A stretch of DNA of 64,000 bases. Source: Chrysemys picta bellii (taxonomy: Eukaryota). The stretch covers positions 11,284,001 through 11,348,000 of the forward strand of contig NC_088803.1 of NCBI RefSeq assembly GCF_011386835.1, in the 5' to 3' direction. A program made the translations under genes and the position numbers. Of this stretch, positions 32,349 to 40,900 are shown piece after piece. Under the pieces are notes generated by a model. The model was not told the origin of the DNA and ran no database searches. It worked only from the letters and a program-made list of their open reading frames with translations. Each line of letters opens with the position of its first letter. Within the stretch, counting starts at the first letter, position 1.

Positions 32349-33082
32349 TCACAGGATGGCCTGCGGCTGCTGGGTCATCAGGACGCCGAAGCGTTTCTTG
32401 ATGGTGATGCGGTGGCGGGAGTACTTGTCATCCGGGGAGAAGCGGGCAGGGTGTGCGGAGCAGGTCAGCTGGCCAGAGGGATCCACTTTCTGCCAAGGAC
32501 AAGACACAGGAAGACATGTTAGAGCACCCTGGGCCTGACCGATAGCCCCCTGCTATCCCAGCCCTGTGCTCCCCTGACCCACGTCTGCCCACCCCTTCTG
32601 ACCTGCAGCCTCCTGCTAGTCCAGCCTTGCCGGAGCCCCTCACTCCTCACCTGCAACCCTCTGCTAACCCAGCCAGTGCCCCTCACTCCCAACTCACAGC
32701 CCCTGCTAGCCCAGCCTTGCACCCCTCAACTCTGCCAGAACCCCTCACTCTTGACCAGCAGCCCCCTGCTAGCCCAGCCCTGCGGGTGCCCCTCCCTCCC
32801 AACTCACAACCCCTGCTAGCTCAGCCCGGACCCCGCGCCCCTTTCCCAGCACTGCCGGTGCCCCTCACTCCTGACCCGCAGCCCCTCCTAGCCCAGCCCT
32901 GGAGCCAGGCAGCGGGTAGGATGGGGCAGGGCCGGGAGTAGGGACAGTAGGAAAGGTTCGGAAGGATCCGGATTGGGACAGAAGTCGCCAACCCTGCATC
33001 CGGATTGCACCCCGGGGGAAGTGCTCACCTTGAGGGTGTAGACCCTGTCACCCTGCGCGTTGAGATAATACTGCAGGAACAT
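32349..33082 (-). CDS. NOP10: H/ACA ribonucleoprotein complex subunit 3 (64 aa)
   Basis: Exons 33082-33029 ([18 protein letters not shown]) and 32489-32349 ([46 protein letters not shown]), GT-AG. Confidence 0.98.
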
Positions 33083-33164: not shown

Positions 33165-33620
33165 CTGGGAACTGTAGTGCGCTCTAACTCCAATGTACGC
33201 TAGGAGAGGGACCGCCCATTGCCCGCAGTGCACTCTGGGAGTTGTAGTTCAGTCTAGCCCCAATGCCCAAGGAGAGTTGCAGGGTCTCTACCCCAGGGCA
33301 CTCTGGGAATTGTGCCTTAATGCACTATAGGAGAGGGACCTCAAGCCCCAGTGACCTAGGAGGGATGGAGGGTGTATACTCCAATGCACTCTGGGAGTTA
33401 TAGTGCACTCTGCCCCCAATGCCCTAGGAGAGCGGCAGGGTCTCTACTAGAGCTGTAGTGTGTTCCAGCCCCAATGAACTCTGGGAGCCATTCTCTTTCT
33501 GCCCTCAAAACCTTCAGAGAGTTGTAGTTGTTTGGCTAGCCAGGTGCATTATGGGAGTTGTAGTTTCTTAGCCCTCCGGTACTCCAAATTTCTGCACCCC
33601 AGTGCATTTTGGGATATGTC
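33165..33620 (-). promoter_or_regulatory. NOP10 promoter: array of ZNF143/THAP11-type ACTACAnnTCCCA motifs
   Basis: + strand CTGGGAACTGTAGT 33165, CTGGGAGTTGTAGT 33235, CTGGGAGTTATAGT 33391, CAGAGAGTTGTAGTT 33515, TGCATTATGGGAGTTGTAGTT 33545-33565, plus partial copies at 33303, 33449, 33481 and 33603. Confidence 0.7.
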
Positions 33621-34214
33621 CTTTCTGAGCTTCTAACCTCCCTGCTCCCAGTACAGCTCGTGTCCCACCCCCATGACCTAAACCAGGGTGGGCAAACTTT
33701 TTGGCCGAGGGCCACATCGGGGAATAGAAATAGATTTGTGGGCCATGAATGCTCTCAAAATTGGGGTTGGGATGCGGGCACTGGGGTGAGGCTGGGGCTG
33801 AGGAATTTGGGGTGTAGGAGGGTGCTCTGGGCTGGGACTGAGGGGTTTGGAGGGTGGGAGGGGGATCAGAGCTGGGGAAAGGGTGCAGGTTCCGGATGGG
33901 GGTGTGGGCTCTGGGGTGGGGCTGGGGATCAGTGGTTTGAGGTGCTCCGGGCTGGGATCGAGGGGTTTGGAGAGTGGGAGGGGGATCAGGGCTGGGACAG
34001 GGGGTTGAGGCATGGGGAGAGGCTCAAGGGTGCAGGCTCAGAGGGGCACTTACCTCAAGCGGCTCCCGGAAGCAGTGGCATGTCCCTTCCCCAGCTCCTA
34101 CATGGAGACATGGCCAGGCAGCTATGCATGCTGCCCCCTCTGCAGGTGCCGCCCCTGCAGCTTCCATTGGAGCACGTAGGAGCCAGAACGGGACCATGCC
34201 ATGGCTTCTGGGAG

Positions 34215-35544
34215 TAGAGTGACCAGATCACCCAGGTGAAATATCGGGACGGGGGGGGCGCAAAAAAAAAAAAAGCCGCCAGAGCTCCACGCCCCGCCCC
34301 CCAGCTTGCCTCTGCTCCGTCTTGGCCGCCGTGGGCCCGTGCCCGCCCGGCTTGCCCCCCCAAACACATACACACACACCCCCCTGCACAGACACCGGTC
34401 ACCCCTGCCCACGCACACACACAGAGCCCTGCACAGCTCCACTAGTCACTAGACCAGCCCCTTTCTCAGCTAGCAGCTCTGGTGTCCCCAGACCAAAGCT
34501 CCCCAACCCCCGACCCCTGTGCACCCCGTGAGGAAAGCCAGTCCTCCTTTCCGGCTCCCCGGGGCCACTGGACTGTCCGGGACTTGACCCCAGGCCAGAT
34601 TTCAGTCCAACACACCCAGGAAGCAGTGCTCCGGGCCAACTTCCAGCGGTGGCTAGGCCCGCAGAGCCGGAGGGAGGCGCAGCCCAGCGTGGAAGGTGTC
34701 TCGGGCTGGGCGGCCCGCGGGGGCAGGTTTGAGAAACCCCTTCCTGGGCTGGGGGCTGCTCTGACTGCTGGCGTGCAGGGCCAGGCTGGAGGGGATCGGG
34801 CAGTGCTGGGCGCGGAGAGTGGCGCTACGACGCGGCGTTTGCGGGCCTGGGCTGGGCTGGGCTCGGCTGCCGGCGGACGGGCCCCGGGGCGGCTTGAGAG
34901 GCAGGCGAGGTCCGGGAAGACGTGTGGCCGCAGAGGGGCTGAGCTCCTGCCTCGCCTCGGGAACCCCCAGCGGGGCAGCTGCAAACGCGTCTCGCTCTCC
35001 CCAGCCCAGGCCGGGCCCCTCCCGCCGCCGCTCACTACCTATCCCTGCGGCGGGACGGGCAGGGGACCGGCTCCCCCACCCCCTGAGGAAGAGGCTCTGT
35101 GCGCCAGCGGCCAAGCTCCGGCTTCCAGTCCCTCCTCAGTCACCCGCCCCACACGCTGAGCCAGCTGCGGCCAGGGGAGCAGACTGGGCTGGCTGCAGCG
35201 TGCCCAGATAGTGCTTGGGGAAGAGGCGGGCTCAGGGCAGGGATTTGGGGAGGGATCCAATGGGGGAAGAAGGGGGCGGGGGGGCGCAAGCGCCGGAGCA
35301 GAGGGCAAAATTGTTTGTTTGTCCTAGGGTGACCAGACAGCAAGTGTGAAAAATCAGGACGGGGGTGGGGGGTAATAGGAGCCTATATAAGAAAAAGACC
35401 CCAAAATCGGGACTGTCCCTATAAAATCGGGACATCTGGTCACCCTAGTTTGTCCAGTGTCCCGGCCGAACATCAGTCGGGACGCGGGACAAACAAGCAG
35501 ATATCGGGACAGTCCCGATAAAATCGGGACGTCTGGTCACCCTA
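34215..35544. mobile_element. hAT non-autonomous element (1330 bp) with CpG-rich interior, middle element
   Basis: TIR TAGAGTGACCAGA / TCTGGTCACCCTA; subterminal ATCGGGAC repeats; perfect TSD TCTGGGAG at 34207-34214 and 35545-35552. Confidence 0.85.
35325..35447. mobile_element. 123-bp hAT MITE of the same TIR family, innermost element
   Basis: TIR TAGGGTGACCAGA / TCTGGTCACCCTA; perfect TSD GTTTGTCC at 35317-35324 and 35448-35455. Confidence 0.9.
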
Positions 35545-35737
35545 TCTGGGAGCCACGTGGTGCAGCCCTCAACCCTGTGCCCCAGTTGGAGCACCAAGGG
35601 GGGCCGAGCCTCATGGTGCGGCCCCCAATCCAGCGTCCCGGCAGGAGTGGGGCCGAGCTGCGTGGTGAGGGTCACTGGACCGGCTTAAAATGGCTCGTGG
35701 GCCATAGTTTGCCCACCTCTGACCTAAACCATTCGCT

Positions 35738-36145
35738 CATAGGCGCCGACTCCGGGGCTGGAGCATCCACAGGGGAAAATTGGTGGGTGATCTGCACTCA
35801 CCGACAGCTCCCTGCCCTGCCTCCCCGCCCCAGCTCACCTCCGCCTCCTCCCCTGTGCATGCGTTGTGCCTGCTTTCCCCCCCTGTGCCCAGCGCTTGCG
35901 CCACAAAACAACTGTTTTGCATGGCAAGCGCTGGGAGGGAGGGGGGAGTAGGGGGAATGCAGTGTGCTCAGGGGAGGAGGCTGGGGCAGGGATTTGGGGA
36001 AGGGGTCCAATAGGGGCAGGGAGGGGGCGGAGTTAGGGTGGGGGCTTTGGGGAAGGGGTTGGAATGGGGGCAGGGCAGGGAAAGGGTGGAGTCGGAGTGT
36101 GGGGGCGCTAGCACCCACCGGCGCTGGGGAAAGTTGGCGCCTATG
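35738..36145. mobile_element. hAT-like MITE
   Basis: TIR CATAGGCGCCGACT / AGTTGGCGCCTATG; degenerate TSD CATTCGCT / CATTTACC. Confidence 0.7.
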
Positions 36146-36184
36146 CATTTACCCCCTTTTAGCTCCCCAAACAAATGGCTCCCC

Positions 36185-36310
36185 AGTGCACCCTGGGACG
36201 TGTAGTCTAGTAGCTCCCACTGCTCCATGGGGGTTGTAGTCACTAACATCCAGTGCATTCTGGGAATTGTAGTATCTCCCCCTTCCCAATGCCCTGTGAG
36301 AGTTGTCATC
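36185..36310. promoter_or_regulatory. Second cluster of ZNF143-type motifs (candidate NUTM1-side promoter)
   Basis: CTGGGACGTGTAGT 36193, ATGGGGGTTGTAGT 36227 and TGCATTCTGGGAATTGTAGT 36254-36273; same orientation as the NOP10 array. Confidence 0.55.
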
Positions 36311-37942: not shown

Positions 37943-40900
37943 CTGGGGGGCGAGGGTGGGGGGTGGTGCCAGGGCCAGATTGGGGCGTGAGTTTCCCAGC
38001 AGCCCTTGTTCTTCGGCGGGTGCTGCCGATACCCTCTGCAGAGAACGGCCTCCCCTTTCCCTCCCCGCTCATGCTCTCCAACCTTCTCACCCCTCCTTGC
38101 CATGACCTCCCAGCCCCGCCAGGGCCCCCTGCTGCCTCCTCTCCTGCTGCCTACCTTCCCTGGTGCTGCCCTGCTCCTGACCTCACCCGACGTCCCCGGG
38201 GGCAAGCTCATTGTCAAGCTGAAGCCGGAGGGGGCCCAGGAGCCGCCCCGGGCACAGACCATCATCCTAACGGGGGCGCCGGCGGGCTGGCCCCCCACGC
38301 GGCGGGACGGGGCCCCTGTCCGGCTCCAGCTGGCCGCCGGGATAAGGACCGTCCTGCTGAGCAAAGCCAGTGAGGAACCAGGGCCCAGGGAAACCCCTCC
38401 AGCCCGGGCACCCCCCACCAGCGACCCCTCCGCCTCCTGCACCTCCAAGGGTGTCTACGAAAACTATCGGCGCTGGCAGTGCTACAAAGCCCTGGCTAGG
38501 CAGCACTTCCCGGGCACGCCCGACGCCGAGGCGCTGGCCTGCTTCTTCATGTGAGAGCCTGGAGAGACTCCGGCTGGGACAGCAGGGGGCTGCAGTTGGG
38601 AGTGAGGGGCACTGGCACAGCTGGAGTGGGGGGGAATCCCAGGGCTGGGCTAGTAGGGGACTGCAGGTCGGGAGTGAGGGGCATCGGAAGAGCTGCAGGG
38701 GAAGCCCAGGGCGGGGCTAGCAGGGGGCTGCGGGTTGGGAGTGTGGAGCTCCCTCCGGCGCTGACCCAGGCTCCCCCACAGCCCCGTCTTGCGGTCGCTG
38801 ACCCGCCTGCGCCCCGAGCTGGCTCTGGAGGAGGGGGTGCCACGTGCCGTGCAGGAATGGGAGCGCAGCAGCAACTTCGAGCGCATGATCTTCTACGAGA
38901 TGGCTGAGAAGTGAGTGTTGCCCCGTGGGGCTGGCCCTGGGCATCCTGCCGCCCAAGTACTGCGCTGGAGATCCTGGGGATGTCGCCCCCGCTCTAAGCC
39001 CAACCCTCCTCCTCTTCCTCAGGTTCATGGAGTTCGAGGCTGAAGAGGAGCTGCAGATCCAGAAAATGAAGCTCCTGAGTAGCTCCCAATTCCAGCCCCC
39101 ACCCACCGACCCTCCCAAGCTTTCCGGCCCGCCAGCCCTCGATGTTGGCCAGCAGCAAGGTACCTTCCTCCTAAACCCCCACAATACCCTGGGGTGGAGG
39201 GAAACCCCTTCACAGGTGACAGGAGATAGTCACTGACTGACTGCAGGGTTCCCCCCACATACCCTGATTATTATTATTTTTTGCACAAGCCTTTCACTTT
39301 GGCATGGTTTTTGCACACACCCAGCACCTTTGGCTTTTGCACATACCTAGAATGTTTGCACGTGCAGAGCACCTGTGCACAGTTTTTTGCATGTACCTAG
39401 CAACTTGGCCTGGGTTATTTTGTGCATACCCAGCACTTTTGCATGATTTTTGCACGTGCCTAGAACTTCCTCTCTTTTTTGCACATACCCAGCATTTTTG
39501 CAGTTTTTGTATGTAACTAGACTTTTGCACACTCCCAGCAGTTTTGTACTTTTCCAATACCTAGAACCTTTGCACATACCCAGCACTTATGCATCTAAAA
39601 TCTTTGCATGTTTTGCACATACCCTTTTGCCCAGTTTTTGCACATACCTAGAACCTTTGCACCTTTTACAGTACCTAGAACCTTTGCACTTTTCACATCT
39701 ACCTAGAATAGGGGTGGGCAAACTTTTTGGCCTGAGGGCCACATTGGGGTTCTGAAACTGTACGGAGGGCTGGGTAGGGAAGGCTGTGCCTCCCCAAACA
39801 GCCTGGCCCCTGCCCCCTATCTGCCCCCTCCCACTTCCTACCCCCTGATTGCCCCCCTCAGAACCCCTGAACGATCCAGTCCCCTCGCTCCTTGTCCCCT
39901 GACTGCCCCCTCCCGGGAACCCCCGCCCCTAACCACCCTCCCCCTGGGATCCCATTTCCTATCCAACCCCACCTGCTTCCTGTCTCCTTACTCCCCCGAT
40001 CCCTAGCCACACCCTCGCCCCCTGACAGGCCCCCCAGGACTCCCACGCCTATCCATCTGTCCCCTGCTCCCTGTCCCCTGACGACCCCTCGAACCTCCGC
40101 CCCATCCAACCACCCCTTGCTACCTGTCCCCTGACTGCCCCCCGGGACCTCCTGCTCCTTATCCAACCACCCCGCTCCCCGCCCCCTTACCATGCCGCTC
40201 AGAGCACCAGGACTGGCAGCTGCGCCGCCCAGCTGCAGCCAGCCACGCCGCCGCGCTGCCTGACAGGAGCTCGTAGCCCCGCCACCCAGAGCGCTGGCGG
40301 CACGGGGAGCTGAGGCTGCAGGGGTGGAGGGACAGCAGGGGAGGGACCAGGGACTAGTCTCCCTGTCTGGGAGCTCAAGGGCCGGGCAGGATGGGCCCGC
40401 GGGCCGTAGTTTCCCCACCTCTGACCTAGAAGCTTTGCAGTTTTTGCACATACCCAGCGTGTTTGCCCAGTTTTTACACATACTTAGAACCTTTCTACAT
40501 TTTTGCATGTACCTAGAACTTTACACAGTTCTTGCACATACCCAGCACTTTTGCATGGGTTTTTTTTTTTTTGCATGGACCTAGAACCTTTGCATGGTTT
40601 TTTTTTTGTTCATACCCAGCACTTTTGCAGTTTTGCACATACTTAGAACATTTGCATATATCCAGCACTTTCGCACAGGATATTTTTGCACAGACCCAGA
40701 ACCTTTGTACATTTTTTCCCTACTAACCTGGTGCCATTGAGTGTTCTTTTTGGCTGGGTGGAGGTCACTGGCAACGTTACATCCCTCCACCAGGGGGCAT
40801 TGGGTGCTGAGTGGAGGATCCCAAGGACTCTGGGTGCTGGGTGGGTGGTCCATGGTGGTGCTGGGTGGGGGCATCCCTGGGGATACAGGGTGCTCGGTCA

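What the first reader, a model, noticed from the sequence alone, without database searches (positions are those of the whole stretch)
33676..35729. Triple-nested hAT stack carrying CpG-island-like cargo (candidate Pack-type gene-fragment capture)
Seen: three elements nested one inside another, each with a perfect 8-bp TSD (ACCTAAAC, TCTGGGAG, GTTTGTCC). The middle element holds about 870 nt (34440-35310) of non-repetitive CpG-dense sequence with a stop-free 226-codon + frame (GTG start) and a donor-like AG|GTAGTGAGC on - near 35040; there is no transposase similarity. Known: Pack-MULE/Pack-TYPE elements capture host DNA in plants, and few vertebrate hAT cases are described to my knowledge. Inference: a hAT has mobilised a host promoter or first-exon fragment and dropped a new CpG island into the NOP10/NUTM1 promoter.
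Basis: partly seen in the sequence, partly recalled or inferred. Interest (0 to 1): 0.7.

Follow-up and report, generated by a model that had tools for sequence, protein, structure and literature searches.

The report
Nested hAT transposons with CpG-rich interior
Three small cut-and-paste (hAT-type) transposons really are nested just upstream of the painted turtle NOP10 gene, and the middle one carries about 1 kb of non-coding, CpG-island-like DNA. I found no sign that this DNA is a stolen gene start, so it is most likely an ordinary transposon copy.

Summary
Three TIR-bounded elements are nested, each with a perfect 8-bp target-site duplication:
- outer, 33684-35721
- middle, 34215-35544
- inner, 35325-35447

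They sit 0.6 kb upstream of the NOP10 start codon (minus strand) and 2.6 kb before the first NUT-domain exon of NUTM1. They split an array of ZNF143-type promoter motifs.

The middle and inner elements share ends that resemble the MER81/mir-584 (hAT-Blackjack) MITE. The middle element's ~1.05-kb interior is the most CpG-dense stretch of the 64-kb window and passes Takai-Jones island criteria.

The capture reading is not shown:
- The 225-codon frame is what 71% GC gives by chance.
- The interior has only two ATGs on both strands.
- There is no Pfam hit in any frame and no relative among 1.84 billion proteins.
- Promoter motifs are not enriched.
- No donor copy lies in the window.

The decisive test is the genome-wide copy number and a search for a TIR-less donor.

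This scan has already noted several Pack-type hAT candidates in this genome. One was a 1.3-kb GC-rich element judged multi-copy. My verdict is an ordinary nested hAT stack whose cargo origin stays open. Interest is low to moderate.

The parts
33676..33683 (.). Left TSD of the outer element (ACCTAAAC)
   Evidence: identical to 35722-35729
33684..35721 (.). Outer non-autonomous hAT-type element. It is 2,038 bp with its nested inserts and about 700 bp without them
   Evidence: TIR CAGGGTGGGCAAACT and an 8-bp TSD. A second family copy lies at 39711-40423
35722..35729 (.). Right TSD of the outer element (ACCTAAAC)
34207..34214 (.). Left TSD of the middle element (TCTGGGAG)
34215..35544 (.). Middle non-autonomous hAT-type element, 1,330 bp including the inner MITE. 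Its TIR is TAGRGTGACCAGA, with ATCGGGAC subterminal repeats
35545..35552 (.). Right TSD of the middle element (TCTGGGAG)
34260..35316 (.). Interior ('cargo') of the middle element. It is 1,057 bp, GC 0.70, non-coding, and starts with an A14 run and CA-rich low complexity on its left side
34531..35780 (.). Stretch meeting Takai-Jones CpG-island criteria. Its core, 34601-35200, has 51 CpGs
35317..35324 (.). Left TSD of the inner MITE (GTTTGTCC)
35325..35447 (.). Inner 123-bp MITE of the same family as the middle element. Its 14-bp TIRs are perfect
   Evidence: weak mir-584 (MER81-derived) match
35448..35455 (.). Right TSD of the inner MITE (GTTTGTCC)
33029..33082 (-). NOP10 exon 1 coding part (18 codons, GTGAGC donor)
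32349..32489 (-). NOP10 exon 2 coding part plus the stop codon
   Evidence: 100% identical to the turtle NOP10 cluster P0001
33165..33565 (-). Array of ZNF143/SBS-like motifs upstream of NOP10, part proximal to the gene
36193..36278 (-). Remainder of the same motif array, displaced to the far side of the insertions
38324..38548 (+). First detected NUT-domain coding stretch of NUTM1
   Evidence: PF12881, E 6.7e-21

Best explanation
Three successive cut-and-paste insertions of non-autonomous hAT-type transposons landed in the NOP10-NUTM1 intergenic region of the painted turtle. The order of events was:
- The outer element inserted into an array of ZNF143-type promoter motifs, 0.6 kb upstream of the NOP10 start codon.
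- A 1.2-kb element with MER81/Blackjack-like ends then inserted into the outer element.
- A 123-bp MITE of that same family later inserted into the second element's right subterminal region.

The ~1.05-kb GC- and CpG-rich interior of the middle element is non-coding DNA that travelled between the element's ends. Most likely it is the usual interior of a multi-copy non-autonomous family, whatever its remote origin, and not a fresh capture of a host promoter or first exon.

Shown: the anatomy, the order of insertion, the lack of coding content and the island-like composition. Inferred: that the interior came in with the element, and that it is multi-copy.
For: - Perfect 8-bp TSDs and TIRs for all three elements, with strict nesting.
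- The SBS-like motifs occur only at 33165-33546 and 36193-36260 in the whole window, all in one orientation. The insertions therefore split one array.
- The terminal ~25 nt of the inner and middle elements match the mir-584 consensus, UAGGGUGACCAG..GUCCCG. miR-584 derives from MER81, a hAT-Blackjack element (PMC10671384).
- The 123-bp MITE equals the left ~79 nt plus the right 57 nt of the middle element's ends, with a ~14-nt overlap. That is the usual relation between a MITE and a longer family member.
- There is no coding content: no Pfam hit in 12 frames or pieces, none in the word search, none among 1.84 billion representatives, a chance-level frame and only two ATGs.
- Promoter motifs are not enriched over composition.
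- No donor copy lies in the window.
Against: - The copy number of the interior was not measured, so the 'multi-copy' part is an inference from base rates and an unverified lead.
- A GC of 0.73 with CpG observed/expected of 0.64 is unusual for a transposon interior and typical of amniote promoter islands. The GC skew flips sign near 34650, as at a divergent promoter.
- Six runs guessed to be RNA hold 7-16% of the interior's sampled words. That could reflect a transcribed donor exon or local transcription.
- The two window copies of the outer family share only their ~38-bp ends. Ends with swapped interiors therefore do occur in this genome.
Confidence: 0.5

Rival explanations
1. Pack-type capture. 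A MER81-like hAT element acquired about 1 kb of a host gene's CpG-island promoter or first exon, by template switching during gap repair or replication. It then carried that DNA by transposition into the NOP10-NUTM1 intergenic region.
For: - The interior is island-like in composition and the most CpG-dense DNA of the window.
- The GC skew switches sign near 34650.
- There is no transposase similarity.
- The whole unit is bounded by one TSD.
- hAT is the commonest Pack-TIR carrier in animals, with 208 of 370 cases and 38 in alligator (PMC8277862).
- Runs guessed to be RNA hold small shares of the interior's words.
- Other unverified notes of this scan report hAT captures in this genome.
Against: - No exon-like content: the frame is at chance level, there are two ATGs in 1,057 bp, and the stretch upstream of the donor-like string has no ATG.
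- No protein relatives.
- No enrichment of ETS, NRF1, CRE, YY1, SBS or TATA motifs.
- No donor was identified.
- At about 1 kb, the cargo is several times the median captured size of 224 bp.
Confidence: 0.27
2. In-situ, transposition-independent gap filling. A short MITE inserted first. Later a break inside it was repaired by copying about 1 kb from another template, so the interior never transposed.
For: - Most single-copy animal Pack-TIRs form this way (PMC8277862).
- A 12-nt direct repeat, GGGGGGGCGCAA, lies near both edges of the interior at about 34252 and 35277. It could be junction microhomology.
- Unverified note s1-320921 reports such a patch elsewhere in this genome.
Against: - Such fillers usually come from within 15 kb in cis, and no copy exists within about 30 kb on either side.
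- By my own estimate, a 12-mer repeat in 1.3 kb of G-rich DNA is expected about 0.5 times by chance.
- 1 kb is large for a patch.
Confidence: 0.1
3. Composite (two-element) transposition. Two half or whole MITEs that flanked a stretch of ordinary genomic DNA were mobilised together, using only their outermost ends.
For: - The middle element's left end is only 45-67 nt of MITE-like sequence, while the right end carries duplicated right-end modules at 35391-35447 and 35488-35544.
- Unverified note s1-328323 reports a MITE-bounded composite in this genome.
Against: - The extra ends are fully explained by the inner MITE, which has its own perfect TSD.
- There is no internal second left end at the cargo's right border, nor a right end at its left border.
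Confidence: 0.06

Closest known systems
MER81 / hAT-Blackjack MITEs (the source of miR-584 in primates)
   Same: - The TIR begins TAGGGTGACCAG and is followed by GTCCCG-type subterminal motifs.
- The short form is about 120 bp and palindromic.
- The TSD is 8 bp.
   Different: - The Rfam mir-584 score is only 22.8 bits against a gathering score of 80. This is a resemblance of ends, not membership of the miRNA family.
- The turtle element has ATCGGGAC repeats.
- In the middle copy there is a 1-kb unrelated interior.
Animal Pack-TIRs (Tan et al. 2021, PMC8277862) and plant Pack-TYPE / Pack-MULE elements
   Same: - TIR- and TSD-bounded unit with no transposase.
- The interior is unrelated to the autonomous element.
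- The superfamily is hAT, the commonest carrier in animals.
   Different: - The defining parental, TIR-less copy was not found and could not be searched for.
- No exon fragment is recognisable.
- The cargo is much longer than the median.
- That study lists 0 Pack-TIRs for the painted turtle, with only 330 annotated TIR TEs.
Ordinary non-autonomous hAT-N families of reptile genomes
   Same: - Short conserved ends and a non-coding interior of unknown origin.
- Frequent nesting.
- Related MITE-sized deletion derivatives.
   Different: The interior has unusually high GC and CpG content. Family copy number was not measured here.

Membership tests
hAT superfamily, non-autonomous element | 8-bp target-site duplication | tested here: met
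   Perfect 8/8 TSDs for all three elements. The second outer-family copy also has one, ACCTAGAA.
hAT superfamily, non-autonomous element | Short TIRs of about 10-25 bp beginning YAG | tested here: met
   TAGRGTGACCAGA matches at 12/13 and 14/14. The outer left TIR is CAGGGTGGGCAAACT, with a complementary right arm.
hAT superfamily, non-autonomous element | Ends shared with a named hAT family or an autonomous partner | tested here: inconclusive
   The ends resemble the MER81-derived mir-584 consensus, but only at 22.8 bits and local E 0.019. No autonomous partner lies in the window, and the genome was not searchable.
Pack-TIR / Pack-TYPE element | TIRs and a TSD enclosing non-transposon DNA | tested here: inconclusive
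   The TIRs and TSD are met. There is no transposase similarity. Whether the interior is 'non-TE' depends on its copy number, which was not measured. A 65-nt piece matches a neighbouring repeat.
Pack-TIR / Pack-TYPE element | A parental copy without TIRs elsewhere in the genome | not testable with these tools
Pack-TIR / Pack-TYPE element | A recognisable gene or exon fragment in the cargo | tested here: not met
   There is no Pfam hit and no protein relative. The frame is at chance level and the interior has two ATGs.
CpG island (sequence criteria) | At least 500 bp, GC at least 0.55, CpG observed/expected at least 0.65 | tested here: met
   34531-35780 passes. It is one of four such stretches in the window.
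CpG island (functional) | Unmethylated in the germline, with promoter activity | not testable with these tools
   No methylation or mapped RNA data were available. Promoter motifs are not enriched.

The most novel reading that the evidence does not exclude
A hAT element delivered a ready-made CpG island, captured from another gene's promoter, next to the NOP10 promoter. That island now acts as a new transcription start, for example an alternative NUTM1 or divergent non-coding promoter, in pond turtles.
Probability: 0.06. Interest if true: 0.6.

Novelty: new member of a known kind. Interest (0 to 1): 0.24.

Why it matters
If the interior were a captured promoter that works at its new site, it would be a clean vertebrate example of a DNA transposon moving a CpG island between genes. 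As the evidence stands, it is a well-preserved nested hAT stack. It shows that hAT elements were repeatedly active in the turtle lineage and that they tolerate, or prefer, open promoter-proximal DNA. It also split a ZNF143-type motif array upstream of a housekeeping gene without destroying the gene.

Tried and rejected
No depth, joints or RNA coverage were obtained.
3. NOP10 was searched by exon 2 alone, by reference. The joined two-exon protein was not built.
4. The word search and the full representative search with the 225-aa frame gave nothing. The databases evidently hold no calls from this locus at all, so the blank argues against coding but says nothing about DNA copy number.
5. A metagenome scan with a 28-nt CpG-free piece of the interior found 0 matches.
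6. The search of earlier findings by sequence, for the interior and for the inner MITE, was blank.
7. I considered that run X1 is very small (10 M letters of contigs) yet holds 58% of the interior's sampled words, which could prove high copy number. I rejected this because it could equally be one lucky low-coverage run of the reference animal.
8. I considered the 12-nt direct repeat at the cargo edges as a TSD or microhomology. It is at chance level in G-rich DNA.
9. I considered a retroposed origin because of the A14 run at 34263-34276. The run is on the wrong side and strand for a poly(A) tail.

Full report
**What is there.** Reading 33300-36100 and the repeat scans confirm three elements nested one inside another.
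- The outer element spans 33684-35721. Its left end is CAGGGTGGGCAAACT, with a complementary right arm. It is flanked by ACCTAAAC at 33676-33683 and 35722-35729.
- The middle element sits inside it at 34215-35544. Its ends are TAGAGTGACCAGA and TAGGGTGACCAGA, and it is flanked by TCTGGGAG at 34207-34214 and 35545-35552.
- The 123-bp inner element sits inside the middle one at 35325-35447. Its 14-bp TIRs are perfect, and it is flanked by GTTTGTCC at 35317-35324 and 35448-35455.

A blind scan of 33600-36300 for any TSD plus TIR pair recovers exactly these three 8-bp-TSD structures. It finds nothing convincing inside the interior. The nesting gives the order of insertion: outer, then middle, then inner.

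**Genome and gene context.** Earlier notes of the scan name the genome as painted turtle. In agreement, NOP10 exon 2 (32349-32489, minus strand) is 100% identical to a 64-aa turtle NOP10 cluster. I searched it by exon, by reference, and did not build the joined protein.
- The NOP10 start codon is at 33082 on the minus strand, so the stack begins 602 bp upstream of it.
- NUTM1 lies on the plus strand. NUT-domain (PF12881) stretches start at about 38324 and continue at 40.9-42.2 kb.

Upstream of NOP10 there is an array of diverged units. Each carries GCACTCTGGGAGTTGTAGT-like motifs, whose reverse complement is ACTACAACTCCCAGAGTGC. From my own knowledge this looks like the ZNF143/Staf site; I did not test binding. 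Such motifs occur at 33165, 33235, 33391 and 33546, again at 36193 and 36260, and nowhere else in the window. The hAT stack, together with a neighbouring 408-bp TIR element at 35738-36145, was therefore inserted into one promoter-proximal motif array and split it.

**What kind of elements.** The 8-bp TSDs and the short TAG/CAG-initiated TIRs are the hAT hallmarks.
- Rfam gives a weak hit of the inner element to mir-584 (22.8 bits against a gathering score of 80). The alignment shows why: the consensus begins UAGGGUGACCAG..GUCCCG and ends with its complement, like the turtle ends. miR-584 derives from MER81, a hAT-Blackjack MITE (PMC10671384).
- I take this as a resemblance of ends to a known hAT MITE group, not as membership of the miRNA family.
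- The 123-bp inner MITE aligns to the left ~67 nt of the middle element and to its right 57 nt, with a ~14-nt overlap. That is the usual picture of a MITE and a longer relative with the same ends.
- A second copy of the outer family lies at 39711-40423, with TSD ACCTAGAA. It shares only the ~38-bp end with the first copy, and the interiors are unrelated.

**The interior.** The interior, 34260-35316, is 1,057 bp.
- Composition: 34601-35200 has 51 CpGs, GC 0.73 and observed/expected 0.64, the highest CpG count of any 600-bp window in the 64 kb. The stretch 34531-35780 is one of four that pass Takai-Jones criteria. The GC skew changes sign near 34650. 'CpG-island-like' is therefore correct as a statement about sequence.
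- Coding: the 225-codon GTG frame (34482-35159) is not evidence of a gene. Four frames on both strands are open for 128-237 codons. A run of at least 237 codons arises in 12-22% of shuffles. The whole interior has two ATGs on both strands.
- Protein searches: twelve frames or pieces have no Pfam match at E up to 1, neither transposase nor NUT. The word search and the full search of 1.84 billion representatives found nothing.
- Splice signal: the donor-like AG|GTAGTGAGC string is there (35030-35046, minus strand), but no ATG lies upstream of it.
- Promoter motifs: ETS, NRF1, CRE, YY1, SBS, TATA and CCAAT are not enriched over a composition-matched model. Sp1 boxes number 6 against 3.2 expected.
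- Other copies: within the window the interior has no second copy, apart from 35217-35279, which is 80% identical to 35971-36030 in the neighbouring repeat.

**What could not be done.** I could not run it.
- The run search shows that 28-58% of the interior's sampled 31-mers are present in DNA contigs of five coded organisms. It also shows 7-16% in six runs that are only guessed to be RNA.
- That result fits orthologous presence in related turtles, paralogous copies, or partial transcription. It cannot tell them apart.

**Weighing.** Animal Pack-TIRs are documented: 370 in 100 genomes, most on hAT elements, 38 in alligator, with multi-copy cases rare and fillers mostly from within 15 kb (PMC8277862). 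That study lists none for the painted turtle, whose TIR elements were barely annotated at 330.

Earlier, unverified notes of this scan describe several Pack-type hAT candidates in this same genome, with mixed outcomes. One of them, s1-325590, was a 1.3-kb GC-rich composite that looked like a captured first exon or promoter and proved multi-copy. I could not test whether it is the same family, so it is a lead only.

My probabilities follow from three things: no exon was found, no donor was found, and most TSD-flanked non-autonomous elements are family copies.
- About 0.5 that this is an ordinary copy of a multi-copy family with a GC-rich non-coding interior.
- About 0.27 for capture of host promoter DNA.
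- About 0.1 for in-situ gap filling.
- About 0.06 for composite transposition.

**Verdict.** This is a new member of a known kind, of low to moderate interest.

Noticed in passing
window 33165-33565 and 36193-36278: There is an array of ACTACAACTCCCAGAGTGC-like motifs (ZNF143/Staf-site-like, from memory) upstream of NOP10, all in one orientation and found nowhere else in the window. The transposon insertions split it into a proximal part with 4 motifs and a distal part with 2.
   Followed up: partly
window 35738-36145: A 408-bp element with CATAGGCGCCRACT TIRs, C-rich and G-rich arms and a central palindrome lies 8 bp from the outer hAT's right TSD. No clear TSD is visible. Its G-rich arm is 80% identical to 35217-35279 inside the middle element's interior.
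   Followed up: partly
window 39711-40423: A second copy of the outer hAT family lies between NUT-domain stretches of NUTM1, with TSD ACCTAGAA. It shares only ~38-bp ends with the first copy and has an unrelated C-rich interior. The two target sites, ACCTAAAC and ACCTAGAA, are alike.
   Followed up: partly
window 35318-35447: The inner MITE gives a weak Rfam match to mir-584 (22.8 bits, gathering score 80) because its ends resemble MER81. There is no evidence that it makes a miRNA.
   Followed up: partly
window 32540-32900: NOP10 intron 1 is largely a tandem array of C-rich units of about 60-70 bp (…CTGCTAGCCCAGCC…CCCCTCACTCC…).
   Followed up: no
window 33764-34006: The outer element's left interior is a G-rich array with 40-nt and 120-nt periods, and its CpG observed/expected is only 0.25. 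This contrasts with the CpG-rich middle element nested in it.
   Followed up: partly
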